DNA of 64,000 bases, from the IMG/VR virus record IMGVR_UViG_3300047499_000113, positions 62,001 through 126,000 of that record; one strand, given 5' to 3'. This document shows, one piece after another, positions 7,201 to 40,448 of the stretch. Both the position numbers and the translations under genes were made by a program. The notes beneath the pieces were generated by a model. That model saw only the letters and a program-made list of their open reading frames with translations. It made no database searches and was not told the DNA's origin. The number at the start of each line of letters is the position of its first letter. Within the stretch, counting starts at the first letter, position 1.

Positions 7201-7608
7201 GTTCTTCTGGACCTCGATCTGCTTGTTCAGATCGGTGATCACCTTCATTTGCTTGGCGATCTGCTTGCCAATATCTTCTTTGGCTCCGCCCTTCGCCCCA
7301 CCGTACTGCTTGGCGAGCGTCTTGGCCTTCTTCTTCGCCTCTTCCAGTTCCTTGCCGAGGCCCCCGAGTTCCTTGTATGCCGACTTGGCTGCACTGGAGA
7401 GATTCTTGCCGAGAGAAGCCGCGCCGGAGGAGATCTTCTGCAGTTCTTTGACGTTGAGGCTGGCCGTTTTGGCGATACTCTTCCACGAGACGTCGAGCTT
7501 GCCGAGGTCATGCTCGAGCCGCTTGATGTCCTTGAGTAGGTTAGAGGTCCCCCTCTTGTCGAGTTCCGGTACTACTGGGACCCTGATTTTTATCTCTTCT
7601 TTGGCCAC
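4228..7608 (-). CDS. Tail tape measure protein
   Basis: 1126 aa, Ala/Gly/Lys-rich and helical; C-terminal YATGVTHVPHDMMAQLHAGEQVV is a typical TMP-terminal motif; follows the tube and chaperone genes. Confidence 0.85.
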   Translation of the reverse strand: MAKEEIKIRVPVVPELDKRGTSNLLKDIKRLEHDLGKLDVSWKSIAKTASLNVKELQKISSGAASLGKNLSSAAKSAYKELGGLGKELEEAKKKAKTLAKQYGGAKGGAKEDIGKQIAKQMKVITDLNKQIEVQKNKTKKYNHELERGLKAQQKNTAYLKQAASYSPKDALIDMLKKVKGGDFKGMASTLAQGIGGAMARGRIAKAESVGGEAGASQMAAAGESMVMVSAAAAALTAFVKLILAASQHMADLNKGLTDGIGLAQEMGGSIGTYSKAIKNLRNAAINAAGAMLKYGLNSKDALESVNAFAKQSGMSLAQMDVQLRGMGLSEFAINAQVYGKALGMEAKDVAGMMGQFVSEVGVNADDVQKTMGDIVKQASQSGMATQKFMDIFHQAIPNLDLFTNRIEELTGVMKMLSKTMDPRAVKGFMSAMGKGFDQMDFKQRLKMALVIGPGEMGKIMREDIGRASAAVKDSLKDILSPKEIDAALKSPNSIKAFRNLAAKAMARGATGTQISELNRLGRYQQLQGGGVLKQASGMREMGLMGRMEALQKLAGRFTGGDISGLGEHVAKQLGISEEEYKAILGMQDSLGDYQSAIEESGRTSSKSINANLAKILNLPDPFTDSNKFEMATKEMQKKNPEKLKKALMTAATMQIEEQQQNAKDAAAAQESIEGLTADLIDATQSLGDKTENVLGYLLEKLYFVMDDVFGVLNSLYDALPGWMSGTYSKEIGKAVDKENDNAKKELAGNKEALDYYNKMASELKAAGARGATTNDLLNSNSDLLMQQLHTVKDSPAQADYYKKVSQDIAGVFGGKESDFIKAMKENDSVTTSKMLKGLDPDKAAQLLARLAKDQAKTAKFSAGRGNVPNAPSKVAERAAKKQEQMAKLQSDHDDRAEKLAGQLVDEVSEGNKAPPGVPPAAAASGATPAAEAVPEAQQTQADNSDQQVKNQEDAIEQADKQYEAATDTLSLLKKGIRFEQSWMTTKFRNVLKEASLDALRPALLEQLVGYAKIWDDSDFRKAVAGSGWNIAQTGAQGLNALLLAGQEGGRKLSDLVGFNVGGEKQYATGVTHVPHDMMAQLHAGEQVVSKANAGGVGGKIVNVTIYAQGVPASQIAHHISNLQRSD

Positions 7609-7618
7609 CGGCTAGACC

Positions 7619-8809
7619 TCACTTCTCAGGGTCATTGGAATTTTGTCTATCGGGCCGATGCTCCCGGGACGCCTTTTGGATCTGCTCCCATTGGAGCTGC
7701 TTCATGCGAGCGACGTAGGCATCTGCCTCCGCCTTACCTCCTAGGATGCGTGCACCACCGCCCGACGCGCCGGCGGTCTGGAATACTGAAGCGCGAGCCA
7801 TCAGGGACTTCTGGAACTGCTCCCGCTCGTCGCGCTGTTGCTGGACCTGGGCGAGCTTGGAGTTGATAACAAGGTCGTGGTAGTCCAGCTCGCCCGAAAG
7901 CGCGGCCGAGAGCTGCTGGGCCAGTTCCTCGGCAGTCTCCGCACGGAACCTCTTGGCTACATGTGCCATACGGCCGTCCGGGAGTTTCACCGGTGCGGGC
8001 TCTTCCGTCTCGTCAACATCCTTGCCGACTTTGCGGTTGAGGTAGGTGTAAAGGACCTTCATCTTGAGGTCCTCGCGGTCAGTACGCTCCCTCTCGCGCC
8101 GGATCTTGTCCTTCTCTTCGATGGCTCGAACACCCTTGCCGGCGAAGCAAGACCCGATGAACTTGGCGTTTTGCCAGTCCCGTTCCATCTCCTCGTTGCG
8201 GTCAATGATGTTGTTGAGCGCGATCCAAGTCTGCTGGCAGACATTCATCCCAAGTTCTTCAGTTCCGGGAATGCCGGTGCTGATTGGGTGATGAATTGGA
8301 TTGTCGCGAAGTTGAAACCAGCGGTATCGCGAACGATTCTCGTGGACGTACGCCTCCACGAGTGGCATCAGCAGCTGGGACTTCTCGTTGAGCGCCGTCA
8401 GGTTGGAAACTATTTCGTCCTGGACTTTCGCAGGGAGCTTGCTGATTGTTTTGATCAGCCGGTTGATGTGGCGCGGCCTCTGATAGATGGCGTTCTGCGC
8501 ATCGATCATGAAGATGCTGTATGCGATAAAACACGCGCGGAAGAAAGCGCGCTCCTCGTGCAGACCAGTCATGGACCGCATGAGCTGGATGTTGCGCAGC
8601 TCGTAGTGATTGAGCGTCTTGAAGACGAACGACTTTCCGGAAATAGCAGCCGGGCTCACCAGAAACCCGGTATAGAGGAAGGTCTCCAGTTCCTGCCAAA
8701 CCGATTCATCTACTTGCTTGTAGATCTCGGGTACTTTTATCTCAACGCGCTGATTCCCATGCCCGTTCGTCTGCCCGTTCTGCTGCGTGGGCTGGTCGGT
8801 CATGTTCAC
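7619..8809 (-). CDS. Probable tail assembly chaperone (second)
   Basis: 396-aa ORF immediately upstream of the TMP, GTGA-coupled to the previous gene (start may be ATG at 8803). Function assigned from synteny only. Confidence 0.5.
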   Translation of the reverse strand: MNMTDQPTQQNGQTNGHGNQRVEIKVPEIYKQVDESVWQELETFLYTGFLVSPAAISGKSFVFKTLNHYELRNIQLMRSMTGLHEERAFFRACFIAYSIFMIDAQNAIYQRPRHINRLIKTISKLPAKVQDEIVSNLTALNEKSQLLMPLVEAYVHENRSRYRWFQLRDNPIHHPISTGIPGTEELGMNVCQQTWIALNNIIDRNEEMERDWQNAKFIGSCFAGKGVRAIEEKDKIRRERERTDREDLKMKVLYTYLNRKVGKDVDETEEPAPVKLPDGRMAHVAKRFRAETAEELAQQLSAALSGELDYHDLVINSKLAQVQQQRDEREQFQKSLMARASVFQTAGASGGGARILGGKAEADAYVARMKQLQWEQIQKASREHRPDRQNSNDPEK

Positions 8810-11425: not shown

Positions 11426-12463
11426 TCACTCGACGACGTTGGCTTCCGCTTCGTAGCGGTCCAGCTCCACAGTCAGGCCGCGCATGAGCTGCTTGCGCAT
11501 GTCTTCCAGCTCGCGATGCTTTTGTGCCAGCTCTTGGAGAAAGAGCTGGACGTAGCGGTCCTGTACCTTGGGGTGCCTGTGCTCGATCTTCTCGCGCGTC
11601 TTGAGTAGGACGTCAGCAGCCTTCTCGAGCGCCTTGTCGATGGGAGGTAGCTTTCCGCGCGTCTTCTCGACAAAATCGACAATCGCCTTGTCGTATTCTT
11701 TGTCGTCGCCGTCGCGCTCGAGCTTCTCTTTCACCTGAGTCGTGATGTCCTGCTGGGCTTGCAGCCAACGCGCTGCGATGCGCGACGCCACCGACTTGTG
11801 AATCTGTCCGTCGTAGACGCCTATCGACTTCAGTAACTTCTCGTCGATGTCATTGCCGTGCATCCATTCGACGTTGTCCCCGTCACCATCCATCCAAACC
11901 GAAACGTCGACTCCACCGAGCGCCCCATGAAGAGCGTCGAGTACCTGCAGTCCCGTCATGACGGATGACGAAGTCAGTTTGGCCAGATCCTCTACAACGT
12001 CCTCGGTGAAAGGCACCAGAACGTAGGCGTCTCGACCCACACGGATCAGGTATTTCTGCGGATCGAGAGGATCTGGCGAAGGGCTGAATTTGCCGGCAGC
12101 CTCGGCTTCCTCGGCTCGGAGCCATCGGCTCGCGATGCGCGACGCCAATGTCACGCGGGTGGTAACGAGCGAACTCATGCTGTCCGTCCGAGGGTAACGC
12201 GCCCCGTGTCCTTGGAGCCAGGCGTCAGCAATCTTCGAGGCGGTGGTAGGCTCGGCCGGAGTACCCGTGCTCTTCTGTGCCCACTGGGTTTTGTCAGGCA
12301 TCTCGAACACGGTGCACCTGTATCCCTGAATAGTCAGATAGCCTGAGAATTTCGCCTCCTTCACTACTTCGGGAGGGAGCTTCTCAGGCTTCCAGGAGCC
12401 ATCAGGCTGCAGGCGAAATGCCACTCCCGGTTGCAGTCTGGGTTCTGAAGTCCCTTCAACCAT
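11426..12463 (-). CDS. Hypothetical modular protein with three ASxIAxxWL motifs (possible internal virion protein)
   Basis: 345 aa; ASKIADAWL, ASRIASRWL and ASRIAARWL separate apparent modules. Confidence 0.7.
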   Translation of the reverse strand: MVEGTSEPRLQPGVAFRLQPDGSWKPEKLPPEVVKEAKFSGYLTIQGYRCTVFEMPDKTQWAQKSTGTPAEPTTASKIADAWLQGHGARYPRTDSMSSLVTTRVTLASRIASRWLRAEEAEAAGKFSPSPDPLDPQKYLIRVGRDAYVLVPFTEDVVEDLAKLTSSSVMTGLQVLDALHGALGGVDVSVWMDGDGDNVEWMHGNDIDEKLLKSIGVYDGQIHKSVASRIAARWLQAQQDITTQVKEKLERDGDDKEYDKAIVDFVEKTRGKLPPIDKALEKAADVLLKTREKIEHRHPKVQDRYVQLFLQELAQKHRELEDMRKQLMRGLTVELDRYEAEANVVE

Positions 12464-12896
12464 TAGAGACCTCTGAGGTCAGATGCTGCCCTCGCCCATA
12501 GCTCCGAATGCGATGACAGTTTGCGCAAACAATATCACACTTGACGACCTCTGCCAGGATCCGGTCTCTACCCCATCGCTTGACACGGGGATGGGATAGA
12601 TTGATGATTTTATCCCCTCTATGATCAAAATCCATCACATAATGAGGAAACTCATTCCTGCAATCCGCGCAGGGCTTAGACTTCAGACTGCGAATAAATT
12701 CCGCAACATCTAGCCGACGAGCCTCTGCCTGGGCAAAGTACACAACTTTGTTTGCTTCGTAGTGGGATCTGCCGCTTTTCTTTCGGCATTCCACACAACG
12801 AGCCGACAGTCCATCCCGCTCGGACCAGTCAAAATGCTCTCGGTCAGCCGGTTTCGGTAGACCGCACTTGGTGCAAGTCTTGGAACCGGCTTCCAT
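12456..12896 (-). CDS. HNH homing endonuclease with N-terminal Zn-finger
   Basis: CTKC...CVEC N-terminus; CADC...MDFDH...CDIVCANCHRIR; visibly lower GC than the flanks. Confidence 0.85.
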   Translation of the reverse strand: MEAGSKTCTKCGLPKPADREHFDWSERDGLSARCVECRKKSGRSHYEANKVVYFAQAEARRLDVAEFIRSLKSKPCADCRNEFPHYVMDFDHRGDKIINLSHPRVKRWGRDRILAEVVKCDIVCANCHRIRSYGRGQHLTSEVSNG

Positions 12897-23436: not shown

Positions 23437-24135
23437 CTAGGCCAGATTAGCTACGGCGCCGCCCTTGAACAAAACCCATTCACCCTTTTCGTCCAAGACA
23501 TGGAGCCGTCCGTCGTTGAACGGTGGTTCGCCTTTGTAGTAGAACTGGATTCGGAACCCTCGGAGAGTGTCATAACCTTCTGGATGACCGGCTTTCTTTG
23601 AGTGGAACTTGCGAATGGCAATCGCACGCTTCAGCACAGGCCAACGGTTTGGAGCTGAAGAGCGCCAATTACCAACGAACAAGTCTTGGGCTCGGATGAG
23701 CAACACATTGCCAGGCTCATTGTTGCAGCATTTGGGGTCTTTGCAAGTACCCCAATTCGATCCGTCTTGGCGTTCGAGACGGATTTCAATGGATCGATCT
23801 AAATCGGGCTCGCCATTCTTGAGTGCGGACTGGATGACCGTACGCAGTTTGGCGATGATCGGGTCTCCTGGCACATAGCAAATCTCACTCGCTTGGATCC
23901 ATGAGTCATCCAAGTCTTCGGGCTGCACCGCGAAGCTGATGTTCATGAGAATCCATTGGTCAGGCTGGAACTCGGCCGTGTAACCTTCTGGCGCTAGGAT
24001 CGAATTGATCTTGCGCGATTCTGAAAACGTAACGATGTTATCCCAGTTATCCGCAACCGGCGCGGCTTTCGCCTTGCGGCTGAAGAGCACGAGAGGGAGA
24101 GCCAGGAGAGACCGAAGGAGACTGCGCCTGCGCAT
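23437..24135 (-). CDS. Hypothetical protein with twin-arginine (Tat)-like signal peptide
   Basis: MRRRSLLRSLLALPLVLFSRKAKA-AP: RR motif, hydrophobic stretch, basic residues before an AxA site. Confidence 0.62.
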   Translation of the reverse strand: MRRRSLLRSLLALPLVLFSRKAKAAPVADNWDNIVTFSESRKINSILAPEGYTAEFQPDQWILMNISFAVQPEDLDDSWIQASEICYVPGDPIIAKLRTVIQSALKNGEPDLDRSIEIRLERQDGSNWGTCKDPKCCNNEPGNVLLIRAQDLFVGNWRSSAPNRWPVLKRAIAIRKFHSKKAGHPEGYDTLRGFRIQFYYKGEPPFNDGRLHVLDEKGEWVLFKGGAVANLA

Positions 24136-24267
24136 ACAGATACGTTACGCATTCATTAGATATTTGGAGTACAAAAAACCACCTTCGTGAGGATACTCAC
24201 AGCCAAGCGGATAGTAGTATCATCAAACTCCAGCATTTGGATATACCAGCCAAATGTACTCTTGCAT

Positions 24268-24825
24268 ATGGAAACTCGAGTCTGTCGTCTGTGTGGTGGT
24301 GATCCGAAGCCTCTTACAGAATTCTACGAGAACCGCGTAACTCGTGGTGACAAAGTCTATGTCACACATAGAACCGAATGCAGAGGGTGCACAGATGAGC
24401 GCACTCGCGAATACCACCAGAAGAATCGCGACCGCGTGATCCTGAACAACTGCCGTAAGGCAGACAAACTTCTCGGACTGAAAACCACAATCACACGTGA
24501 AGAAATCAGAGAGCTTATCTCTAAGCCATGTGAATACTGCGAGACTCCGGAAGAAAAGATGGGCGTTGATCGTAAGGATAACTCACGAGGTCATATGCCG
24601 GACAACACAGTTCCATGTTGCTTGAGATGCAACGCACTCAAGCGAGACATGCCGTGGGAAGCATGGATATTCCTCGTTCCAAAGATCCGAGAAGCCATGC
24701 AGTTAGGATTGTTCGGTGACTGGATCGGTCACAATCGCGGAAGTAACGAGATCGGCAAGCGCAAAGCCGCCAGTCCGGCATTCCGTGATATGCGGCTCCG
24801 GGAAAATCGCGATGGACGGTCCTAA
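24268..24825 (+). CDS. HNH-family (beta-beta-alpha-Me) endonuclease with N-terminal Zn-finger
   Basis: CRLC...CRGC; CEYC...GVDRKDNSRGHMPDNTVPCCLRCNALK; low GC; convergent with the sheath gene. Confidence 0.82.
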   Translation: METRVCRLCGGDPKPLTEFYENRVTRGDKVYVTHRTECRGCTDERTREYHQKNRDRVILNNCRKADKLLGLKTTITREEIRELISKPCEYCETPEEKMGVDRKDNSRGHMPDNTVPCCLRCNALKRDMPWEAWIFLVPKIREAMQLGLFGDWIGHNRGSNEIGKRKAASPAFRDMRLRENRDGRS

Positions 24826-24829
24826 ATCA

Positions 24830-27800
24830 CTATTGGCTAACGCGGATCTGCAAGGTTGCCACTATATACTCTAGTGGGAACACCGGCACGTAGATCGCGT
24901 CGACCAGAACGATCGTCGGATCGTTCGGCGAGGTGGCCACCGAGATTCCGGAGACCGACTGCACGATCTGCTTGTCGATGAGCTGCCCGAACATACCAAC
25001 CACCTGGTTGTTGATGTTCGTCAGCGTCGCGTTGGTCAGCTTGTTCCCGATGAAGGGATCAAGCGTGTTGCGCATCGTCTGCTGCACGTACTGGATGGTC
25101 AGCGTGACAGACGGGGTCCGCGTGATGACCGTATCCAGGCGCGTGGTCAGACCTTGGCGGATTCGCAGGCCGGACAGCACCTGCTCGATGATGGTGACGC
25201 CTGCGACGGCGACTTGGTTGGCAACCGTGGGGTCGAGCACCGTGCCGAGCGACGTGAAGCCCTGGATCTGGCGCCGCGTGAGCGGAGTCGCCACGTCGAT
25301 CGCCGGGTTGCACGTGGAGCCCGAGACGGCCGCTGCCATGAACGAACCGTCGATGAGCTGCTCGAGCGAGTTGCCGTTCGTGTCGGTCACCGTCACGACG
25401 AACGAGTCGGGGTAGACCACGATCATCAGCTCCGAGGAGAGCCCCTGAGCGATGGCCTGGACACCGAGCGCCGTCGTGCCGACTGCGACACCCACCACGC
25501 CCATGCGCTCGCCCTCTTGACGGGGGCTGCTCATGAAGACGCAGTGCTGGTTGAGGTACGTCATCACCGAGGGATCGGTCGTCAGCGGCGTGATGACGTC
25601 CGCCTTGACCTGACCCGAGATGGGCTTGCGCAGAGTGTCGATTGCCGCCGTGTAGGTGGCATCCGAAGCCTGCGACTGGCCCGGTGCACGCAGCACCTGC
25701 TCGAGTCCGACGATGACCGCGCCGTTGAGCAGCGCGAGCGAAGCCGCCAGCGACAGCGGGTTGTCCGGCGTCGGCGTTCCGAAGTTCATCTGAATCGTCT
25801 TCAGGTCTCGGAACAGTGCCGGCGCCAGATCCGTCTTGCCGTACTGATACGAGATGTAGTAGACGTCTCCGATGGACGGCTGGAAACCCTTGTGCGGGTA
25901 CGTCGACACGATGCCGGTGGTGCCCGGCGCCATGTTGATCGTGTTGTACACGAAGAGTTCGACGCCGGGGATTGCCTTGGTCGAGATGGCAGCGTCGCAC
26001 GTGAAGATGGAGTTAACCACCAGCGTGAAGCTGCCGCCGTTGTCGTAGTCGCCAGCGGAGGCCGGCAGCACCGTGAAGCGCAGACCGGTCGTCGCGTCCG
26101 TGTACGTCTGGCCGGGGAAGCCGTAGCCGTGAGAGCCGCTGCTTCCGGCCGAGGACGAGACCTGGAAGCCCGCCATCGAGTTCTCGCCGATGCCGCCGCT
26201 CATGCCCGGGACGATGCCGAGGCCAGCATCCGGGACGAATGCCGAGTTGGCGATGTTCGTGAAGGCGATGGTCGAGGCCGAGCCCACAGATCGGGAATCG
26301 ATCTCGAGGTAGTTGCCGAGACCCTGGACATTCAGGAAGTAGGCAACTGCCAGAGCACCGAATCCGGTGTTGTTGTTGAGCGCCGTGGAGATGAGGGCTG
26401 CCGTGGGCTGCGTACGGGCTGCCGAGACACCCGACGTGAAGCCGAGCGGCATGTTGCCCGTGCTCGCCTGCAGAACCGCAAGCTGCGACTGAACCGTGTT
26501 GATCCTCGAGGTGAGGACCAGCTCTCCCACGTACTGACCCACGCCCGCCGACGCCACGAGATTCGCCAGGACCGTGTTGGACGAGTCGACACCGTCATTG
26601 GTGCCGTGGACGCTGTAGAGGCCCGCCGTCTGGTTGCGGTGCAGGTTGAATGCACCGGAAGTGGTCGAGTACGCGATGGCGCTGACCAGCGGAGCGAGGG
26701 TCCCGAAGGCCGCCGTCGCATTGGCTTGCGTGATCGTGTTGACCGTGTCGTTGACGACGTGGACACCGGACGCGATGAAGTGCGCGTTGAGCGTCGTCTT
26801 CAGGGCGTTGGCGAGGTTTGCACCGGTCGTGTACGGACCGCCGACAGGATCCGAATCCACAGGCACTGCGTTGAGTGCCGTGTAGTTCGTGATGTCGTTG
26901 ATCTCGTGGTGGACCGCGACACCGCCGTTGTTGTAGTGGGCCAGAACCTCGGTGCGGATCTGGTTGAGCAGCGTCGAAACCGTCGTGTCGTCCACCACCG
27001 ATCCGCCGCCGGCGTAGGGGCCACCAGCCGCAGAGGCGTAGTTGACGGTGAAGGTTCCGGACCCGCCAGTCGTGATGAGCCACGCCTGGTTGTTGATGGC
27101 CGGGTATGTCGAGCCAGTGATGTAGACGTACGAGCCCGTTGCGAAGGCGTAGGCCGACGTCGTGGTCACGGTGAAGGAGACGCCCGCCACCACCGTGATG
27201 CCGGTGATCGGACCACCCGCCTCGTTGGCGTCGGTCACGACGTTCACGTAGTCGGGGTAGCCGTGCACTCCCTGCTGCGAGAGGTGGCGGTTGTACGCCT
27301 CCTGGAGAGCGTGAGCCAGCGTGATTGCCGTCTGCAGATTGGTCGCAGTCGGCGTGGTCACGACGTTCGTCGCATCCGACAGCTGGTGGGTCTGCACCGA
27401 GATGGCGCCGCCGCTCACGTAGCCAGTCTGGTAGGCCGAGAACTGGAGCGTGAAGTGCGTGCCGTCGACGACAGTGACGAGCCAGATGTCGTTGAGCGCC
27501 TGAACTCCCACCGCGCCCGTGATCTTGATCAGAGCGTTGGTCGTCAGGCCGTGCGCCGTGTTGGTCTGGATTTCGAAGAGACCGCCACTGTTCGTGACGG
27601 CCGCGATGCCGCCGCCGACTGGGTTGTTCTCTCCGAGGTGGACGTTGTAATGGGTCGCCAGGTCGTTGACCAGGGCGATGGCGGTCGGAAGATCGACTGC
27701 CGCAGCCAGGGGCTCGTAAGCCGCCGTGACATCACCACCGCTCGTGTACGCGCCGGTGAACACCGACCCGTTGAGCGTGAAGTGGGTCGCGTCGAGCATC

Positions 27801-30649
27801 GTCACGGTCCACGACTGGTTGATCGCCGCGGTCATGCCACCCGTGCCGGTGACACCCGTGATGGCGACCACAGTGCCGGTGCCGAAGGGGCACGGCGTCG
27901 TGGTCTGCACCTCGAAGAGACCGCCATTGTTCGTGACGGTCGTGACCGCGAGCGCAGTCGGGCCGTCCGCGTACAGGTGGTAACCCGTCGGGTATACCGA
28001 CCCAACGTGCGCGTTGTACTGCGTGCGGATGTTGTTGACGACCGTGATGAGGCTGGCCGTCATCGCCGCCACGTCAGTCGGAGACGCGACCGAGAGGAAC
28101 GCGTCGTTGATGGCCGTGACCACGTCGTTCAGAGGAACGGCGGGGCCGGACGGCAGAGTGACGCCGAACTGCTGGCCGTCGACCGACAGCTGGAGGCTGT
28201 CGTTGACGCCTTGCGAGATGTTGTAGGGCGCGATGGCCGTACCGACGAGCTGGGCCGGCTGGTTCAAAGCGTTGTACGAGCCCACCGAGGTGTTGTTGCT
28301 CTGCAGGCCGACCTTCGGAGCGCCGTTGGACTGTCCCGCGCCGACCGGCGTGATGACAGTGGCGTTCGAGATGAGGCCGGAGAGCGCCGAGCTGTTGACG
28401 TTGCGGCCCTTGATCTGCAGGATCGCCTCGGTGCCGCCCGCGAATGAGGTGGCCGACACGAGGTTGTTCGGTGCCGTGCTGAAGAAGGTGCCGGTTCCGT
28501 CCTTGTGAGTCTGGACGTCAGCATCGATCGCCGTGTTGAGCGCGGACACCACGCCGGCCATCGTCGTGATCCCGACCATGGGGACCGCAGCGATGTTGAT
28601 GCCGTCGATGTTGAGCGCGATGTAGTCGGTCGATGCGAAGACCAACGCGTTGGGGTTGGCGACGGGCTGACCGAGGAGCAGAGCCGGGAAGGCAGTGCCC
28701 AGGTTGACCGTGACCGGCGCGTTGCCGTCGATGACCACCCCGCCGAAGTTCTGGCTGAAGGTGTACAGGTCGTACGGCTCGGGATTGGCGTTGGTGAACG
28801 AGGCGCCGTACGCGGGGTCCAGCGAGTCGAGGAACTGGACGGTCACCGTCTCCGGGACCGGGCTTCCTGCGCCCGTGAGGAACGCATCCGGGTTGTTCTG
28901 CACGCCGCTCGGCCACTGGACCTGCTTGGACAGACCCGAGACCGTGCCGAACGTCACGTTGAAGAGGTTGCCGCCGGTTGCCGCCGACGACACGGTGTAC
29001 TGGCCCACTCCGCTCGGACCCACGGTCTGCACCGAGAAGGTGAAGACGTCCTCGCCGATGCGGTTGTACCAGAAGGTCGCGAACGCCTGGTAGTCGGCCG
29101 GGACCGGATTGGCCAGGGTCACGATGTTGGTCGAAGAATCGACCGCGTTGACCTGAACCGGAGGATGCGCCTGCGCGTCACGCCAGCTCTTGCCGACGTA
29201 GACGATGACGAGATCCGGACGGTTGGTCGGAAGGTCGATGCGGCCGTTGGTGATCGTCTGGTAGAGCGACTGACCCAGCGGCGTGTCGCGGCCGTTGCCA
29301 GTCGTCGGCGACAGCGGCATCACGAACTTGGTAGTGCTGACCTGGTTGGTCGTCGGGTCGGTGTAGCGGGCGAGCGGAGCCGCGAAGATGCGGTTGTCGA
29401 CCAGAAGGCCCGTGATGACCGTCGAGTCGAAGTTCGCCGTGCCCGTCGTGTTGCCAGCCGCCACCGTGAAGGCGGTGCCCCACTGGATGGTGGACTGCTC
29501 GCCGTTGTTGACGATGACGAAGTCCGGGCCGTTCACGAAGTCGGTGCGGCCGGGGCCAATACCGCAGTTGGTGACCGACAGGACGTTGCTGTTGGGCAGG
29601 TAGTCGAACGTGTCCTGCCACGTGTTGAAGTAGTACGTGATGGCGACGATCGACCCAGGCTTCGGGGCGAAGGGCAGCGTCACGGTCTGGTGCTGTCCGT
29701 CGACAGCTGCGGCGAGAACCTGCTGGTTGTTGACCAGCACGGTGACCTTCGAGGGGTCGGTGGTCGTGATGCCGCCGCCCGAACCATCGACGATCGGTCC
29801 GTTGTAGACGCGGAACGCATTGTTGCGGCCCGTGGTTTGTCCCGGGTTGAAGCCGAGGGCGCCGTTGGCGTTGCCCGAGCCCACCAGGATGTTGCCCTGC
29901 GACACCAGCTGAACGTGGTTCAGGCCCTGGTTGTCGACGTGCACCGACGCCGTGAGGTCCGTGACGTTTGCCGCGTTGATGTCGTTGGCGATGTCCGAGG
30001 CGGCGCGCGTGGCGCCGGCCGTCAGCTTGATGGCGACGGTGTTCGTGTCATCGACCGTCAGTTGCAGCGTGTCGTTGACGCCGAGGATGATGTTGTAGGT
30101 CTCGGCCTTGGGCGCCACGAGGATGCCCGGAGTCGGCGTGACTTGCGGCGAGACGTTGTCGGTGATCCGAGTGTCGCCACGGTGGAAGTAGTAGTTGACC
30201 GCGACGATGTCAGTCGGCTGCGGCGGGATGAGCAGCTGGATGATGCCGTTCTGTCCGTCGACGGCCGAAACCACTGCTTGGCTGCCGTTGACCGTGACCG
30301 ACACCTTCGTGGTGTCGTAGGTGACCTTGCCCACGCCCGATCCATCGACGATCGGGTAGTTGCGCACCTTGAACTTCGTGATCGTCCCGTTGGCGTTGCC
30401 GAGCACGGGCTGCGCGTTCGTTCCGCTGACCACGAAACGGCCAGTGGGATCCTCGCCGTACACCGGCGTGTCAGCGACGCTGCTGGAGCCGCGAATCAGC
30501 TCGAAGTTCGTCTGCGTCAGGCTCTCCTGCGCGACTCCGATCAGAACTGGGACCCGCAACCCGCCGAGGATCTGGTTCAGCACCGGCTCGGCCAGCGTTT
30601 GCACGTAAACGCCGGGGGGCGCGTAGGTCGAGAAAGGTCCGATGCCCAT
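24830..30649 (-). CDS. Contractile tail sheath protein with large repeat insertions
   Basis: N-terminal YAPPGVYVQT; C-terminal sheath core (GVTIIEQ...LRIRQGLTT...FIGNKLTN...YVPVFPLEYIVAT); 1939 aa; GGGAG RBS. Confidence 0.92.
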   Translation of the reverse strand: MGIGPFSTYAPPGVYVQTLAEPVLNQILGGLRVPVLIGVAQESLTQTNFELIRGSSSVADTPVYGEDPTGRFVVSGTNAQPVLGNANGTITKFKVRNYPIVDGSGVGKVTYDTTKVSVTVNGSQAVVSAVDGQNGIIQLLIPPQPTDIVAVNYYFHRGDTRITDNVSPQVTPTPGILVAPKAETYNIILGVNDTLQLTVDDTNTVAIKLTAGATRAASDIANDINAANVTDLTASVHVDNQGLNHVQLVSQGNILVGSGNANGALGFNPGQTTGRNNAFRVYNGPIVDGSGGGITTTDPSKVTVLVNNQQVLAAAVDGQHQTVTLPFAPKPGSIVAITYYFNTWQDTFDYLPNSNVLSVTNCGIGPGRTDFVNGPDFVIVNNGEQSTIQWGTAFTVAAGNTTGTANFDSTVITGLLVDNRIFAAPLARYTDPTTNQVSTTKFVMPLSPTTGNGRDTPLGQSLYQTITNGRIDLPTNRPDLVIVYVGKSWRDAQAHPPVQVNAVDSSTNIVTLANPVPADYQAFATFWYNRIGEDVFTFSVQTVGPSGVGQYTVSSAATGGNLFNVTFGTVSGLSKQVQWPSGVQNNPDAFLTGAGSPVPETVTVQFLDSLDPAYGASFTNANPEPYDLYTFSQNFGGVVIDGNAPVTVNLGTAFPALLLGQPVANPNALVFASTDYIALNIDGINIAAVPMVGITTMAGVVSALNTAIDADVQTHKDGTGTFFSTAPNNLVSATSFAGGTEAILQIKGRNVNSSALSGLISNATVITPVGAGQSNGAPKVGLQSNNTSVGSYNALNQPAQLVGTAIAPYNISQGVNDSLQLSVDGQQFGVTLPSGPAVPLNDVVTAINDAFLSVASPTDVAAMTASLITVVNNIRTQYNAHVGSVYPTGYHLYADGPTALAVTTVTNNGGLFEVQTTTPCPFGTGTVVAITGVTGTGGMTAAINQSWTVTMLDATHFTLNGSVFTGAYTSGGDVTAAYEPLAAAVDLPTAIALVNDLATHYNVHLGENNPVGGGIAAVTNSGGLFEIQTNTAHGLTTNALIKITGAVGVQALNDIWLVTVVDGTHFTLQFSAYQTGYVSGGAISVQTHQLSDATNVVTTPTATNLQTAITLAHALQEAYNRHLSQQGVHGYPDYVNVVTDANEAGGPITGITVVAGVSFTVTTTSAYAFATGSYVYITGSTYPAINNQAWLITTGGSGTFTVNYASAAGGPYAGGGSVVDDTTVSTLLNQIRTEVLAHYNNGGVAVHHEINDITNYTALNAVPVDSDPVGGPYTTGANLANALKTTLNAHFIASGVHVVNDTVNTITQANATAAFGTLAPLVSAIAYSTTSGAFNLHRNQTAGLYSVHGTNDGVDSSNTVLANLVASAGVGQYVGELVLTSRINTVQSQLAVLQASTGNMPLGFTSGVSAARTQPTAALISTALNNNTGFGALAVAYFLNVQGLGNYLEIDSRSVGSASTIAFTNIANSAFVPDAGLGIVPGMSGGIGENSMAGFQVSSSAGSSGSHGYGFPGQTYTDATTGLRFTVLPASAGDYDNGGSFTLVVNSIFTCDAAISTKAIPGVELFVYNTINMAPGTTGIVSTYPHKGFQPSIGDVYYISYQYGKTDLAPALFRDLKTIQMNFGTPTPDNPLSLAASLALLNGAVIVGLEQVLRAPGQSQASDATYTAAIDTLRKPISGQVKADVITPLTTDPSVMTYLNQHCVFMSSPRQEGERMGVVGVAVGTTALGVQAIAQGLSSELMIVVYPDSFVVTVTDTNGNSLEQLIDGSFMAAAVSGSTCNPAIDVATPLTRRQIQGFTSLGTVLDPTVANQVAVAGVTIIEQVLSGLRIRQGLTTRLDTVITRTPSVTLTIQYVQQTMRNTLDPFIGNKLTNATLTNINNQVVGMFGQLIDKQIVQSVSGISVATSPNDPTIVLVDAIYVPVFPLEYIVATLQIRVSQ

Positions 30650-31247: not shown

Positions 31248-32097
31248 TCACAATACCTTATGAGAGTCTCGTCGCTGTTTGTTGCGTGCGTCAACGCAAA
31301 GCTTGCACTCAATTCTCGGAGCGTCTAAATGAGTCCTGCCAACATAGCACTCATTGAGTGGAATTAAGCCATGTTTCTTACAAATCTTTTGAGTGGATGT
31401 GTAACTTATTTTCTTCGCACGAAATTCGGGGTCTTTCCATTTATCAAGCAGCGCTGATGAGATGTTAGCCGTCACTTTGGTGCGGTAGTTAGCATCGTTC
31501 CAGTTTTTCCTGCTCGATTCCGAAAGTAATGTTTGCATGTCAGGATGCAACATTTTTTCTATAATTTTCGGCAAAGCTTTCGCAATCGCTATGGGACTCA
31601 GGGGCTTTCCAAGCCTTGATCGAGCAATCGCTGCACAATGTTCTGGACTAAGTTTCACACCCTTGTGTGACGCAGACACTTTGGCTCGCCAAGCAGGATC
31701 TCGAGCGCGCTTCCTGGAAGCGGAAGTACATTTATCACGAAAATCGGGATCATCCCACGGGTTCTTCGTTGGGTGTGGAACATGAAGACCCCCACGCATG
31801 ATGTTGAATCCAATCTCTGGATTCCGAGTGTTAAAAAAATTCGATCCAACATTCTTCTGCTAGATTCGCAACTTCGATATTTTGACAAGTCTCTAGGACT
31901 TCGTGGGAGAAGGCGTCCGGTCCATATTTGCGAATAGCATTCGGAAAGTGCCAACGTCCGCCCTTACTTCTCAGGGCAGTCGAGACATGGTCTTTCCATC
32001 GCTTCTCCATTGTCCGAGAAGTGATACCAATGTAACGACGACCAGAGTCAGTATGTGTATGACAGTAAATTGTCCAGACGGATTTTGATGATGCCAT
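31248..32097 (-). pseudogene. GIY-YIG/NUMOD3 homing endonuclease split by a +1 frameshift in a T7 run
   Basis: 5' ORF 31831..32097 (IYCHTHTDSGRRYIGIT...RWKDH...AIRKYG...EECWIEFF-stop). Removing one T of the T7 run at 31833-31839 gives FFNTRNPEIGFNIMRGG, in frame with 31248..31799 (NUMOD3-like KVSASHKGVKLSPEH plus a C-terminal Cys/His finger). Confidence 0.85.
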
Positions 32098-33653: not shown

Positions 33654-34661
33654 TCAGTCGTCCATCTGAGACAGCATCAGGAGACCAGTCGCGACGGCCG
33701 TCATCGGGTCGATCGCGCCACGCACCTCCGAGATCTGGATGGGGAACTTGGCGCGATGAAGCTCGAAGCGCTCCTTGAACTTGTCGAGGAAGCCGCCGGC
33801 GAGCGAGGTCCCGCCCGACACGATGATGGGGATGGGCTTCGGGACGAGAAGCTCGTTCTTGGCCTTCGCGAAGCGCTTGCTGAACTCGTCGATGGTGTAA
33901 TCGATGAGTGTCTGGACGAAGAGCGCGATGGCCTCTTCCTCGCGCGTCTTGGGCTTGGTGATGTCGATGCCGCCTTCCTTGACGGCGCACATCTTGGCCG
34001 CCGTCGAGTTGACAGCTTTGGCCGCACCACCATCGATCCAGTCACCACCCTTGCCGAGAGAAAACTCGAGGGCGCTCATGGCGTTGTACGCCAGACACAC
34101 GTTTGTCATGCCCGAGCCATACGAGATGCCGAGTCCGGAGAAGCTCTCCTTCGTGCAATCCGCATAGATGATGGCGAGCGCTTCGTTGACGGGCTCTGCC
34201 TGATACCCGAGTTCGCCCAGGATCTTGCCGAGGATTGCCCGGTGGTAGGTCACGTCCGACCCCACGACGTCGACCGCCGGCGCCGGGATGGAGTAGCAGC
34301 ACTTCTCCTTGGGCATGCGAGGCTCGCCCAAGATCTGCTTCATCATCAGACCGATGACCTGCTGCGCGTCGATTTCGCCCGAGGCGATCACGCCCTGGGA
34401 CATGGGACGACGAGCCTCCCTGTTGAACAGGTTGGCCGTCTCGAGGGCTTTGTCACCGATGACTAGGAGCTTGCCGTCGACCTCCACGTAGTCGGTGTTG
34501 GAGATCTTGAGCATCCGCTTGGTGTCGAGCGGAAGGTCCAAGAAGGCGTCGCGGACCCGGGAGTGCACGATCTTCTTGGCACTGCGCCGCGCGGCCACGA
34601 AATTCATCGTGCCGCAGTCGAGTCCTACCCCCGCGTCTTCAGGCTTCTTGGTGTCGGTCAT
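33654..34661 (-). CDS. Actin-family ATPase (volactin/MamK-like group)
   Basis: Phosphate-1 GLDCGTMN, connect-1 EPVNEALA, phosphate-2 GISYGSGMTNVC, adenosine VSGGTS, connect-2 DPMTAVATG; start taken as ATG 34661. Confidence 0.9.
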   Translation of the reverse strand: MTDTKKPEDAGVGLDCGTMNFVAARRSAKKIVHSRVRDAFLDLPLDTKRMLKISNTDYVEVDGKLLVIGDKALETANLFNREARRPMSQGVIASGEIDAQQVIGLMMKQILGEPRMPKEKCCYSIPAPAVDVVGSDVTYHRAILGKILGELGYQAEPVNEALAIIYADCTKESFSGLGISYGSGMTNVCLAYNAMSALEFSLGKGGDWIDGGAAKAVNSTAAKMCAVKEGGIDITKPKTREEEAIALFVQTLIDYTIDEFSKRFAKAKNELLVPKPIPIIVSGGTSLAGGFLDKFKERFELHRAKFPIQISEVRGAIDPMTAVATGLLMLSQMDD

Positions 34662-34694
34662 GGGTCTGCGTCTCCGTATCCAGGACAATACAGC

Positions 34695-38031: not shown

Positions 38032-38343
38032 CTATTCTTCCTGTTCGCCCTGCTCGTCTTCGCCGAAGTCACCCTGGTCGTTGATGGCTACCTCGAGCTT
38101 CAGAGGCTTGACAAGCACGCGGCCCGGTTCCAAGCGCAGTTCCCGGGATACCACCTTGATGGCCGCCTCGAGCGCGCTCATGACCTCGGACTCGAGCTTT
38201 TTGACCAGAACATCCTTGGCGACCTGTCCCTCGAACTCTGCGCTGAAGGCTATCTCCGTCCGGACGCTGTACTCGGTCGCCGGGTGCTCCAGGCTCTCGT
38301 GGGTAGAGGCCGCAACGCGAGCAGCGATGGACTCGAGTCTCAT
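38032..38343 (-). CDS. Hypothetical protein with N-terminal SIAARVAA motif
   Basis: Probable start ATG 38343 (MRLESIAARVAAST); the longer track ORF is an upstream extension through the divergent gene. Confidence 0.65.
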   Translation of the reverse strand: MRLESIAARVAASTHESLEHPATEYSVRTEIAFSAEFEGQVAKDVLVKKLESEVMSALEAAIKVVSRELRLEPGRVLVKPLKLEVAINDQGDFGEDEQGEQEE

Positions 38344-38390
38344 ATTCTGGGCACGCATGAAAATTCTGGAGGCTTGGTTGTAACCTGGGT

Positions 38391-38957
38391 GTGGGTCGGG
38401 CCCGGTTTCCTCATCCCTGCGTCTGCAAGGTCTGCGACAAGGAAGTTCCATACAAGGAACGCAAACGCTGTCACAAGTGCGGCGATTGGGTCCACAACTT
38501 TTGCGGCAACGTGGACAGCCGTCATCCCGAAAAGCGGACTCTTTGCTTCGGCTGCCTGCCTCCATGTTCGAACATGGAACTCATCGATGCGCAGATGCAG
38601 GATCTCGACACCAATTGGGAGCCCGAGGCGTACAAGTCCGGGGCTATCTTCCTTGCGTCGCTGCACTGCGGGCCAGACGAGCAGAAAATCGCCGAGCTGA
38701 CTGGCTACCTGCCGGACGAAGTCCGACTCCGAGGCGACAGACTTCGAGCGAACAAGCTCTGGTTCGACGACAAGGTTGCCATTCCAGGACCAGTCCCGGA
38801 AGGTGACGGTCGAGCCGCGAGCATCGCGCTTCTCATGGCCGTCCTGTGCGCGGACGGGATGATTCAGCGCTCAGATACCGAGGAAGCGGCGGGGAGTAAG
38901 GGCGCCGCGGCCGACGCTGGGACCAAACGAGCTGCGGATGCCGACACCGAAGCGTGA
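38391..38957 (+). CDS. PHD-finger-like (C4HC3) + HTH-like protein
   Basis: CKVC-x11-CHKC-GDWV-H-NF-C-x13-CFGC, then EQKIAELTGYLPDEVRLRGDRLRANKLW. GTG start with weak RBS; 3' end overlaps the adaptor gene by 87 nt. Confidence 0.62.
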   Translation: MGRARFPHPCVCKVCDKEVPYKERKRCHKCGDWVHNFCGNVDSRHPEKRTLCFGCLPPCSNMELIDAQMQDLDTNWEPEAYKSGAIFLASLHCGPDEQKIAELTGYLPDEVRLRGDRLRANKLWFDDKVAIPGPVPEGDGRAASIALLMAVLCADGMIQRSDTEEAAGSKGAAADAGTKRAADADTEA

Positions 38958-39770
38958 CTGACGCAAACCGCGAATGATCTTCACGGTCTCCTTCGCGGCT
39001 GTCACGAAGTCGGTGAAACGCTGCTGGGCGTCGTTGGCCATGCCCTGGTACTTGGCGCTCTTCTCCAAGTCGAGCGACACACCGCCGATGGTGTATCCGA
39101 ACTCGTCGAGGATCCAGTTCAAGGACACGGCGTTGACCGCGTGCACCATAGCGCCTGTGAAGAGCAGAGTGCGCCAGTCGCGGTGCTCCGAGATGAGCTG
39201 GTCGAGCGTCTGGTAGAACGTCTGCGGCGGGTACATGTTGATGGAGTCGTTGGACATCCGCAGGAACTCGAGCAGTTCCGCGTCCTCCCAAATGTAGCCG
39301 AACACACGCGTGAACTCGTTGACCGATTCTTCGCCCGCCGGCGGCACGAAGTGGTAGTTGCGCGCCGGGTTGTTGTCGCGGAGCATGATGCGCATGCCGC
39401 GAATGAGGTCGTACTCGATGGGCGTGATCCCAGGAAGGGTCACGACCTGCGTCGCGTTATCGACGATCGAGAACTCCTGGACCGTCTGGACTTGAGGCGA
39501 GTTGACGAACTGCCTGAAGTACCAGCGAATGCGATAGTTGCCGATATTGGCGTCGAGCGGGATGACGAAACAAGCGAAGTATTCACCCGTTGCCGGATTG
39601 CGCGGATGACGATTCGCTGGCGGGAGGATGACCTCGAGTCCCGTCGTGAAATCGTAGACGCTGTAGGTGATCTCGGCCGCGTTGGTGGGCGAGCCGTCCT
39701 TCGACTTCAGGAAGATGTTGAGGCCATTCGCGCGCCCCAACTCCTGACCCCGCCGGAATGTGGTCGCCAT
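38871..39770 (-). CDS. Head-tail adaptor/neck protein with N-terminal Ig-like domain
   Basis: GEYFACFVIP...GNYRIRWYF (Ig-like), then LIRGMRIMLRDNNP...WEDAELLEFL...GGVSLDLEKSAKY (adaptor-like helical domain). Confidence 0.65.
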   Translation of the reverse strand: MATTFRRGQELGRANGLNIFLKSKDGSPTNAAEITYSVYDFTTGLEVILPPANRHPRNPATGEYFACFVIPLDANIGNYRIRWYFRQFVNSPQVQTVQEFSIVDNATQVVTLPGITPIEYDLIRGMRIMLRDNNPARNYHFVPPAGEESVNEFTRVFGYIWEDAELLEFLRMSNDSINMYPPQTFYQTLDQLISEHRDWRTLLFTGAMVHAVNAVSLNWILDEFGYTIGGVSLDLEKSAKYQGMANDAQQRFTDFVTAAKETVKIIRGLRQSRFGVGIRSSFGPSVGRGALTPRRFLGI

Positions 39771-39779
39771 GAAGGCACC

Positions 39780-40448
39780 TTACTCTTTGACGTGCGGCGT
39801 ATGGCCTTCGTTGTATTGGTTCCAGCTGAGTGCCTCGGCCCGCTCCTTCGAGAAGCCGTGGTCCTTGACCATCTTCTCGACGACGCCACCCCAGCCCGGA
39901 GGAGACTTGGCCGTCTCCTGCTGCTGACCCTGGTGTTCGCCCTCGTTCAGATGGACCTCGGGAATGGGCTCGTCGCCCTCCGCGTCCTCGAGGGTCATCT
40001 TCCAGTCAGCTTGCTGCTGACCCTGCTGCTCTTGCTGCCCAGTGGTCTCCATCGCAGCGATGATGGACTGCAGGTCGGACAGTACGACCTCGAGCTGAGG
40101 TTTCGTCGAGTTGGCAAGACGCGCGGCGACGAGCCGGATGTCGTGTGCGATGTCGTTGGGCGTAACTGCGCCCTTCTTCATGTGCTTGAACTTCTCGACC
40201 TGCTTGAGGCGCTCCTCGGCCTTGCCGTGCGAGGGATAGCAACCACCACTCCAGTCCGGGTTTTTCTCGGACTTGACGCAGTAGCCCTTGCCCTTCTCGT
40301 GCTTGATGTAGCCAACCTGCTCCTGCTGGCCCTGCTGTTCCTGCTGCGAAACAACCGCGGGCGGAGCATCCGCGGGCAGACCTTCAGATTGCTGCTGAGC
40401 GCAGACGGAACGCGATGCTACCCGGGCGGCCAGAGAGAGCAGACTCAT
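39780..40448 (-). CDS. Modular Gln-rich hypothetical protein with N-terminal SLAARVAS motif
   Basis: Probable start ATG 40448 (MSLLSLAARVASRS); modules GYCVKSEK...GCYPSHGKAEERLKQVEKFKH and SPPGWGGVVEKM...AEALSWNQYN joined by QQEQQGQQ repeats. Confidence 0.7.
   Translation of the reverse strand: MSLLSLAARVASRSVCAQQQSEGLPADAPPAVVSQQEQQGQQEQVGYIKHEKGKGYCVKSEKNPDWSGGCYPSHGKAEERLKQVEKFKHMKKGAVTPNDIAHDIRLVAARLANSTKPQLEVVLSDLQSIIAAMETTGQQEQQGQQQADWKMTLEDAEGDEPIPEVHLNEGEHQGQQQETAKSPPGWGGVVEKMVKDHGFSKERAEALSWNQYNEGHTPHVKE

What the first reader, a model, noticed from the sequence alone, without database searches (positions are those of the whole stretch)
26580..28060. Tail sheath insert of His-x-His-Asp helical repeats interleaved with three beta-barrel repeats
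Seen: about six or seven copies of L/VxNxLxxxYNxH...(G)VH...DxxNxxT (e.g. VVNNIRTQYNAH...GYHLYAD; LAHALQEAYNRHLSQQGVHGYPDYVN; LANALKTTLNAHFIASGVHVVNDTVN; FNLH...SVHGTND). Between them are three ~70-aa beta repeats (GGLFEVQT...VAITGV...INQSWTVT.LDATHFTL...YTSGG; ~27720-27945, 27400-27600, 27000-27210) resembling the FCCH-like barrels of phage tail proteins. Inference: surface sheath decoration with regularly spaced metal sites (His/His/Asp) and adhesin-like barrels, multiplied over the whole sheath.
Basis: partly seen in the sequence, partly recalled or inferred. Interest (0 to 1): 0.62.

Follow-up and report, generated by a model that had tools for sequence, protein, structure and literature searches.

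The report
Giant phage sheath with His-triad domains
A 1939-residue tail sheath protein of a giant environmental phage carries an outward insert made of six helix-loop units (two three-unit domains, each unit with an invariant His, His and Asp) and three FCCH beta-barrels; the His unit is a widespread but undescribed phage surface module, and whether it binds metal is still untested.

Summary
Window 26570-28072 lies inside one gene, 24830-30649 on the minus strand. It encodes a 1939-aa tail sheath protein of a jumbo phage. The record is 240 kb and about 56% complete; a relative sits on a 439-kb contig.

The insert contains:
- six ~45-aa units, each a helix ending in His, then a loop with a second His and an Asp four residues later;
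- three beta-barrels of the E1 FCCH fold (Pfam, Foldseek).

The barrels are optional. One homolog has six bare units and another has a different barrel layout. Barrel 2 is spliced into the loop between the two His of unit 2.

The unit is a family of its own. It occurs 24 times in three proteins of this phage, and a profile finds 1122 representative proteins in metagenomes. Tandem runs come mostly in threes. The two His and the Asp are kept in 99-100% of 531 units. With a deep alignment, units 4-6 fold as one compact domain (pLDDT 86.6, pTM 0.85). No Pfam or NCBIfam model and no convincing structural relative was found.

Best reading: rigid pseudo-threefold "His-triad" pedestals that display barrels on the tail surface. 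Small three-unit proteins sit in the head-decoration gene slot. Metal binding is plausible but could not be tested, and an adhesin role is speculation.

The parts
24830..30649 (-). Tail sheath gene, 1939 aa (P0001). Conserved N-terminal segment, a giant insertion of about 1500 aa, and the C-terminal sheath core (residues 1593-1936).
   Evidence: ORF list and translation. PHROG 2839 tail sheath E 1.8e-25. Pfam Phage_sheath_1C at residues 1848-1936. Full-length homologs of 1684-1954 aa on contigs up to 439 kb.
27929..28072 (-). His unit 1 (residues 860-907): helix ending in H881, then H891 and D895.
   Evidence: Profile hit of 40 bits. H881, H891 and D895 are invariant in homologs.
27725..27937 (-). 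FCCH barrel 1 (residues about 905-975), placed after unit 1.
   Evidence: Pfam E1_FCCH. AF2 strands plus Foldseek match to E1 FCCH. Absent in homologs P0007 and P0010.
27614..27700 (-). His unit 2, first half (residues 984-1012): helix ending in H1004.
   Evidence: Profile hit. H1004 is invariant.
27395..27613 (-). FCCH barrel 2 (residues 1013-1085), spliced into the loop between the two His of unit 2.
   Evidence: Best Pfam E1_FCCH stretch, 1024-1083. Its position follows from the alignment.
27350..27394 (-). His unit 2, second half (residues 1086-1100): H1088, D1092, N1095.
   Evidence: Weak profile hit to model positions 27-46. The three residues are invariant in homologs.
27209..27349 (-). 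His unit 3 (residues 1101-1147): H1122, H1129, D1133, N1136.
   Evidence: Best unit, 61.6 bits. The residues are invariant.
26999..27208 (-). FCCH barrel 3 (residues 1148-1217), between units 3 and 4.
   Evidence: Pfam E1_FCCH, weak (E 0.072). AF2 strands at pLDDT 84-92. P0007 carries extra barrels at this site.
26570..26998 (-). His units 4, 5 and 6 (residues 1218-1260, 1272-1315, 1318-1360), forming the second triad domain. Motif residues: H1238/H1248/D1252, H1290/H1297/D1301, H1337/H1348/D1352.
   Evidence: Profile hits. AF2 with a 131-row alignment gives pLDDT 86.6 and pTM 0.85 for residues 1212-1366. The residues are invariant.

Best explanation
The stretch is an outward-facing decoration module carried by every subunit of a contractile tail sheath.

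Its constant part is six ~45-aa units with the consensus A-T-D-L-x-S/T-A-I-x-L-A-N-x-L-K-x-x-Y-N-A-H-x5-V-H-x3-D-x2-N-x-V. Each unit is one helix that ends in the first His, followed by an extended return loop carrying the second His and the Asp. Three successive units close into one compact domain with pseudo-threefold symmetry, so the sheath has two such 'His-triad' domains: units 1-3 and units 4-6.

The first triad serves as a pedestal. Three FCCH beta-barrels are spliced into its surface loops and linkers, and their number and position change between related phages.

Inferred, not shown:
- The three helices of a triad run parallel.
- The first His continues the hydrophobic stripe L11-L15-Y19-H22, so the three first His point towards the bundle axis at one pole.
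- Together with the second His and the Asp they form a buried polar or metal-binding cluster that locks the small domain rigid.

The function of the module is virion-surface decoration: stiffening or shielding of the tail surface and display of accessory barrels. The same triad is used in head-decoration-slot proteins and in giant fibre-like proteins.
For: Sheath identity and position of the insertion.

Six units, and His/His/Asp invariant across sheath homologs.

The same unit elsewhere:
- 15 copies in a 2080-aa protein and 3 in a 680-aa Ig-domain protein of this genome. That makes 24 units, or 8 triads.
- A profile search of 1.84 billion representative proteins gives 1122 hits at E<=1e-3 and 550 at E<=1e-10.

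Grouping in threes:
- Units per protein peak at 3 (46 proteins) and 6 (30).
- Tandem runs of 3, 6, 9 and 12 number 161, 26, 6 and 3. Runs of 4, 5, 7 and 8 number 29, 18, 6 and 4.

Conservation: over 531 units from 163 proteins, H22 is 100%, H29 100% and D33 99%. The stripe L11 (85%), L15 (L 53%, I 32%) and Y19 (Y 56%, F 34%) runs in phase with H22.

Fold: AF2 of units 4-6 with a 131-row alignment gives pLDDT 86.6 and pTM 0.85, one compact domain.

Barrels optional: P0010 is 55% identical and has six bare tandem units. P0007 lacks barrel 1 and has extra barrels at site 3.

FCCH fold.

Decoration context:
- The 175-aa three-unit protein P0154 lies just downstream of the major capsid gene, after one HNH gene.
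- PHROG 6994 'head fiber protein' weakly matches the helix part of the unit.
Against: - No coordinates were available, so neither the parallel topology nor the clustering of His and Asp was measured.
- The 100% His figures are partly circular, because the units were collected with a profile that rewards those residues.
- Runs of 1 and 2 units are also common (88 and 65). This may reflect missed degenerate or interrupted units.
- Triad 1 (units 1-3, with barrels) was not folded with a deep alignment.
- No tube or baseplate gene was recognised next to the sheath gene.
- No experiment bears on function.
Confidence: 0.65

Rival explanations
1. Structural metal sites. Each triad binds one or more metal ions (Zn, Fe or Ni) through its six His and three Asp. 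The sites are either a His3 or His6 site on the pseudo-threefold axis, or three separate 2-His-1-Asp sites. The metal is needed for folding or rigidity, so a tail would carry on the order of a thousand or more sites.
For: - Near-absolute invariance of exactly two His and one Asp per unit over 531 units, well above the core hydrophobic positions and across all sheath homologs.
- His22 lies in phase with the hydrophobic stripe.
- From my own knowledge, not tested here: homotrimeric phage fibres such as the T4 gp37 tip hold metal ions on the threefold axis through His residues.
Against: - No geometry was measured and no metal-binding family matched (Pfam, NCBIfam, PDB sequence and fold searches).
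- Asp33 precedes a short helix in unit 4 of the model, so it could equally be a helix N-cap.
- His can serve in buried hydrogen-bond networks without metal.
Confidence: 0.35
2. Host or matrix adhesion. The FCCH barrels, and perhaps the triads, bind cell-surface polysaccharide or protein weakly and reversibly. The whole tail surface then acts as a low-affinity adhesin, as proposed for Ig-like decoration domains.
For: - Barrel number and position vary between close relatives, as expected for accessory surface modules.
- The same barrel occurs in an 861-aa protein of this genome that, read by eye, has Ig-like repeats, and in 'phage stabilization protein' genes of other phages.
- A published review proposes adhesion or stabilisation for extra sheath domains (PMC9230969).
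Against: - No ligand-binding family, lectin or carbohydrate-binding module matched.
- The barrels are dispensable in P0010.
- There are no binding data.
Confidence: 0.3
3. Lattice cement. The insert domains of neighbouring sheath subunits contact each other and stabilise the extended state of a very long tail, or tune its contraction.
For: - Extra sheath domains have been proposed to cement the tail (PMC9230969, citing phage 812).
- The six-unit scaffold is constant in all sheath homologs while the barrels are not.
Against: - No interface was predicted or tested; no complex job was run.
- The same triad occurs in proteins that are not lattice-forming sheaths.
Confidence: 0.2
4. Enzyme. The His/His/Asp sets are catalytic centres, for example a hydrolase or a 2-His-1-carboxylate iron centre.
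For: Only the residue types.
Against: - Units of 45 aa repeated up to about 27 times in one protein, with no substrate-binding domain.
- No match to any enzyme family or fold.
Confidence: 0.03

Closest known systems
Multi-domain ('type 3') phage tail sheath proteins (T4 gp18, Staphylococcus phage 812, Bacillus phage AR9), as reviewed in PMC9230969
   Same: A conserved core built from the N- and C-terminal parts, with additional domains inserted between them that point away from the tube. Large phages have more such domains. The C-terminal core matches PHROG 2839 and Pfam PF17482.
   Different: At 1939 aa it is far above the sizes the review quotes; its type 2 proteins reach 713 aa. The review describes most extra domains as Ig-like. 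Here the insert includes two His-triad helical domains and three FCCH barrels. No solved sheath matched by sequence.
E1 ubiquitin-activating enzyme FCCH domain (Pfam PF16190)
   Same: The same small beta-barrel fold. Pfam gives 35 bits against a cut-off of 29.5. Foldseek gives probability 1.0 and rmsd 2.2-4.6 A over 81-95 columns to UBA6, UBA1 and the isolated FCCH domain 2v31.
   Different: There is no E1 context. Here the barrel is a movable cassette spliced into loops of a virion protein. Its copy number differs between relatives and its function is unknown.
PHROG 6994, 'head fiber protein' (67-position profile)
   Same: It matches the helix half of the unit. The six-unit array of sheath homolog P0010 scores E 8.9e-8, and small three-unit proteins score E 4.5e-6 to 7e-4.
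   Different: The sheath's own units score only E 0.084. The profile covers the helix and not the His-Asp loop, and the annotation is untested. It does not describe the three-unit domain.
Metal sites on the threefold axis of homotrimeric phage fibres (for example the T4 gp37 tip); from my own knowledge, a lead only
   Same: A threefold arrangement of repeated His in a virion surface protein. This is a possible analogy for how the triad is stabilised.
   Different: Those are three separate chains with His-x-His in beta structure. Here one chain supplies three helix-loop units. No sequence or fold match was found, and metal binding was not tested here.
BARA domain of Beclin/Atg6 (three beta-alpha repeats, pseudo-threefold) and single-chain helical bundles
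   Same: The general idea of a closed domain made of three tandem repeats. They appear among the best VIA-align rows (Z 5.5-6.6).
   Different: The Z scores are below what chance gives for helical models, according to the tool's own note. There is no sequence similarity, and Foldseek finds nothing (best E 1.3). These are not relatives.

Membership tests
Phage contractile tail sheath | C-terminal sheath core domain | tested here: met
   PHROG 2839 'tail sheath' at E 1.8e-25 over residues 1593-1936 (profile positions 223-565 of 581). Pfam PF17482 scores 23-26 bits at residues 1848-1936, just under the cut-off of 26.9. PF17482 is precomputed on homologs P0005 and P0007.
Phage contractile tail sheath | Conserved N-terminal segment that joins the C-terminal core, with extra domains inserted between the two | tested here: inconclusive
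   Residues 1-60 are nearly invariant in five homologs and conserved in P0010. No profile or structure match covers them, so their role in the core is inferred.
Phage contractile tail sheath | Neighbouring tail genes (tube, baseplate) | tested here: inconclusive
   PHROG and Pfam scans of about 25 neighbouring ORFs found homing endonucleases, an AAA ATPase, a zinc ribbon and a volactin-like protein. They found no recognisable tube or baseplate gene. Most neighbours have no match at all.
E1_FCCH barrel (PF16190) | Pfam score above the gathering cut-off | tested here: met
   Whole protein scores 35 bits against 29.5, E 1.5e-8, with two stretches counted. The single copies score 18.6, 21.3 and 13.6 bits, each below the cut-off on its own.
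E1_FCCH barrel (PF16190) | FCCH beta-barrel fold | tested here: met
   The AF2 barrels mostly have pLDDT 70-92. Foldseek gives probability 1.0 to UBA6 9qic (rmsd 2.2 A over 81 columns) and to the isolated FCCH domain 2v31.
His-triad repeat (defined here; no public model) | A ~45-aa unit with a helix ending in His, a second His 6-14 residues later, and Asp four residues after that | tested here: met
   Five intact units plus one split by barrel 2. H22, H29 and D33 are invariant in 22 units of this genome and kept in 99-100% of 531 units.
His-triad repeat (defined here; no public model) | Units grouped in threes into a closed domain | tested here: met
   The sheath has 6 units, and the genome has 24 in arrays of 3, 3, 9, 3 and 6. 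The family-wide run-length mode is 3. AF2 gives pTM 0.85 for units 4-6. Triad 1 was not folded with a deep alignment.
Metal-binding site (His/His/Asp) | Side chains converge to coordination distance, and metal is bound | not testable with these tools
   Structure prediction returns no coordinates and no metal assay is possible. Only indirect sequence evidence is available.
PHROG 6994 'head fiber protein' | Significant profile match | tested here: not met
   The sheath's best unit scores E 0.084, and the whole sheath gives no hit at E<=0.01. Homolog P0010's array does match, at E 8.9e-8.

The most novel reading that the evidence does not exclude
The His-triad is a new single-chain, pseudo-trimeric metal-binding fold. 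Three parallel helices converge on an axial His cluster, a one-chain mimic of the metal-stapled threefold axis of trimeric phage fibres. Phages would use it as a universal rigid pedestal on heads, fibres and sheaths. In this megaphage it would place on the order of a thousand or more metal sites along one tail.
Probability: 0.25. Interest if true: 0.75.

Novelty: new variant of a known kind. Interest (0 to 1): 0.55.

Why it matters
Extra domains on sheath proteins are known, but their functions are mostly guessed. Three points make this case worth following up:
- The extra part is built from a repeat family with more than a thousand representative clusters in metagenomes. It has no Pfam or NCBIfam model, no solved or convincingly similar structure, and near-absolute conservation of two His and one Asp per 45 residues.
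- A small, confident, closed three-repeat domain is an easy target for expression, metal analysis and crystallography. A structure would annotate a whole class of 'hypothetical' virion proteins of uncultured large phages.
- The movable FCCH barrels show how such pedestals accept inserted cassettes, which is of interest for phage display and engineering.

Tried and rejected
Searches that found no named family for the unit:
- Pfam at E<=5 on every piece of the sheath, and on the motif-rich parts of the 2080-aa protein.
- NCBIfam.
- PDB sequence search with the unit profile: best E 0.015, with no stretch significant on its own.
- PDB sequence searches with the barrels, the sheath core and the full-length alignment: only weak FCCH rows.

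Fold searches with the confident triad model, all negative:
- Foldseek against PDB, best E 1.3.
- VIA-align against 48,161 chains, best Z 6.6, generic helical bundles below the tool's own noise level for helical models.
- ESM Atlas, TM <= 0.43.
- BFVD viral models, best E 1.3.

Other searches:
- The language-model atlas gave only scores of 0.84 or less, not informative.
- GenBank phage records: no DNA match to the gene. tblastn with unit arrays found nothing in two tries, and one metagenomic record in a third. BLAST's low-complexity filter may hide some matches.
- Source names of ten hit clusters were all 'hypothetical protein' or blank.
- Three literature searches found no description of the unit or of such a sheath.

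Rejected:
- An enzyme reading.
- A reading of the units as an inter-chain coiled coil. The reasons are the preference for multiples of three, a carrier that has no local threefold axis in the lattice, and the confident single-chain model.
- The long ORFs on the plus strand over the gene (for example 25154-28447). They look like Arg-rich shadow frames of a GC-rich gene and were not pursued.

Not done:
- No complex prediction was run, because I claim no specific binding pair.
Full report
**1. What is there**

The finding lies wholly inside one ORF, window 24830-30649 on the minus strand, 1939 aa (P0001).
- The window is bases 62001-126000 of a 240,015-bp virus record that CheckV rates about 56% complete.
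- A near relative of the protein sits on a 439,200-bp contig. The lineage is therefore a very large jumbo phage.
- GC content is about 58-65%.
- The C-terminal third matches PHROG 2839 'tail sheath' (E 1.8e-25, residues 1593-1936) and Pfam Phage_sheath_1C.
- The N-terminal 60 residues are almost invariant among homologs.

Everything between these ends, about 1500 residues, is insertion. This is the arrangement known for multi-domain sheath proteins (PMC9230969).

**2. Check of the observation**

- 18 of the 27 His lie in residues 860-1360 (P = 1e-5).
- H-x(5-13)-H-x3-D occurs five times, only there. Shuffles of the same residues give a mean of 0.19.
- A profile built from the units finds six copies.
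- Three ~70-aa segments match Pfam E1_FCCH (35 bits against a cut-off of 29.5).
- In an AlphaFold2 model these segments form barrels that Foldseek aligns to solved E1 FCCH domains, with probability 1.0 and rmsd 2.2 A over 81 columns.
- Internal BLAST gives E 3e-17 for residues 891-993 against 1004-1105. The DNA still shows 71% identity over 91 nt at a spacing of 339 nt. This points to an old tandem duplication of barrel plus helix.

There are six units rather than six or seven. Only units 1-3 are interleaved with barrels.

**3. Anatomy**

- Each unit is about 45 aa: a helix that ends in '...Y-N-x-H', five or more loop residues, then 'V-H-x3-D-x2-N-x-V'.
- Barrels 1 and 3 sit in the linkers after units 1 and 3.
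- Barrel 2 is spliced into unit 2 between its two His. H1004 lies before the barrel; H1088, D1092 and N1095 lie after it. All are invariant in homologs.
- Four homologs that are 67-78% identical over the whole protein (34-63% in the insert) keep every motif His and Asp.
- The barrels are not constant. P0010, a 1684-aa sheath that is 55% identical over the rest of the protein, has six bare tandem units at 863-1105. P0007 lacks barrel 1 and has additional barrels at site 3.

The six-unit array is therefore the scaffold, and the barrels are accessory cassettes.

**4. The unit is a family, and it comes in threes**

In this genome:
- The same unit occurs 15 times in a 2080-aa protein (P0012, genome 31877-38116, arrays of 3, 3 and 9).
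- It occurs three times in the adjacent 680-aa protein that also has a Big_5 Ig-like domain (P0013).
- In 22 units aligned from the three proteins, the two His and the Asp are the only invariant columns.

In metagenomes:
- A profile search of 1.84 billion representative proteins gave 1122 hits at E<=1e-3, 550 at E<=1e-10 and 81 at E<=1e-30.
- Among the listed proteins, units per protein peak at 3 (46 proteins) and 6 (30).
- Tandem runs of 3, 6, 9 and 12 number 161, 26, 6 and 3. Runs of 4, 5, 7 and 8 number 29, 18, 6 and 4.
- Over 531 full-length units from 163 proteins, H22 and H29 are 100% and D33 is 99%. L11 is 85%, N13 is 84% and N36 is 74%. The collecting profile favours these residues, so the figures are partly circular.

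Fold:
- With a 131-row alignment of three-unit segments, AlphaFold2 folds sheath units 4-6 (residues 1212-1366) as one compact domain, pLDDT 86.6 and pTM 0.85.
Its loops holding the second His and the Asp were poorly defined.

**5. What it is not**

- No Pfam or NCBIfam model covers the unit.
- The PDB holds no sequence relative.
- The confident triad model has no convincing structural neighbour in PDB by Foldseek (best E 1.3), in PDB by VIA-align (best Z 6.6, generic bundles), in the ESM Atlas (TM <= 0.43) or in BFVD.
- Deposited phage genomes hold almost none.
- The only catalogued echo is PHROG 6994 'head fiber protein'. It matches the helix half of the unit weakly.

**6. How it most likely works**

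Shown:
- It is a sheath insertion.
- It contains two three-unit domains' worth of repeats, of which units 4-6 fold compactly.
- The barrels are FCCH-fold and optional.
- The same unit is shared with other large proteins of this phage.
- In another phage, a 175-aa three-unit protein lies just downstream of the major capsid gene, separated by an HNH gene. This is the usual slot of head-decoration proteins.

Inferred:
- A closed domain built from three like units has pseudo-threefold symmetry, so its three helices are parallel and equivalent residues form rings around the axis.
- The conserved stripe L11-L15-Y19-H22 (spacing 4-4-3) places the first His on the core face at the helix C-terminus. 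The three first His should then meet near the axis at one pole, with the second His and the Asp of the return loops close by.
- This cluster would either bind metal or form a buried hydrogen-bond network. Either would make a small domain rigid.
- The triads would act as pedestals that display barrels on the tail surface.

I put the structural description at about 0.6 to 0.7 and metal binding at about 0.35. Adhesion by the barrels (about 0.3) and lattice cementing (about 0.2) are not exclusive of the main reading.

**7. Comparison and novelty**

- As a sheath it belongs to a known kind, the multi-domain sheath. It is unusually long, and its insert is made of modules not described for sheaths in the review consulted.
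- The FCCH barrels are members of a known fold family.
- The His-triad appears to be an undescribed domain family.
- I file the whole as a new variant of a known kind, interest 0.55.
- The most novel reading not excluded is a single-chain mimic of the metal-stapled threefold axis of phage fibres (probability about 0.25).

**8. Limits**

- Triad 1 was not folded with a deep alignment.
- No tube or baseplate gene was recognised nearby.
- The host is unknown.
- No experiment bears on function.

Noticed in passing
window 33654-34688 (-): A 344-aa protein matches Pfam PF25216 Volactin, an actin-fold family, at E 2.6e-73. It lies 3 kb upstream of the sheath gene. The gene keeps this place in related contigs (L013-L015). 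So this megaphage lineage encodes an actin-like protein.
   Followed up: partly
genome G000:C1:31877-38116 (-) and 38119-40158 (-), outside the window (L008:378-6617 and 6620-8659): A 2080-aa protein carries 15 His units in arrays of 3, 3 and 9, and has no Pfam or PHROG match. The adjacent 680-aa protein has Big_5 Ig-like domains and 3 units. They are probably fibre or decoration proteins built from the same triad. Homologs of 2200-2580 aa with up to 27 units exist in metagenomes.
   Followed up: partly
genome G000:C1:221418-224003 (+), outside the window (L009:419-3004): An 861-aa protein has several repeats that look Ig-like by eye and one FCCH barrel 46% identical to the sheath's barrel 1. 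The barrel is therefore a cassette shared between virion proteins of this phage.
   Followed up: no
window 24187-24825 (+), 31248-31799 (-), 12456-12896 (-): Homing-endonuclease-like genes (endonuclease VII / HNH; PHROG E 2e-25, 1e-4 and 1e-25). The first lies directly beside the sheath gene and the second about 0.6 kb upstream. In relatives a GIY-YIG gene sits next to the sheath gene instead (L013).
   Followed up: no
window 30379-30442 and 29626-29896 (-) = sheath residues 70-156 and 252-342: Two copies of an ~85-aa segment ('RNYPIVDGSG...VNG...V..VDG....I.L...P...D.V.V.YYF') are 45% identical (E 6e-18). By eye a similar segment occurs in the 2080-aa protein. It is another undescribed module of the sheath insertion.
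   Followed up: no
window 28100-28200 and 26440-26560 (-) = sheath residues about 818-853 and 1366-1404: By eye, the segments flanking the His/FCCH array resemble the two halves of a flagellin 'IN'-type motif. If so, the array is an insertion within an insertion. Pfam gave no hit on the pieces holding the two halves (residues 400-860 and 1380-1600) at E<=5; the 2080-aa protein scored only E 0.06 for Flagellin_IN. Unverified.
   Followed up: no
window 23437-24135 (-): A 232-aa protein with a signal-peptide-like N-terminus lies about 0.7 kb downstream of the sheath gene, beyond the 24187-24825 endonuclease gene. It has no family match.
   Followed up: no
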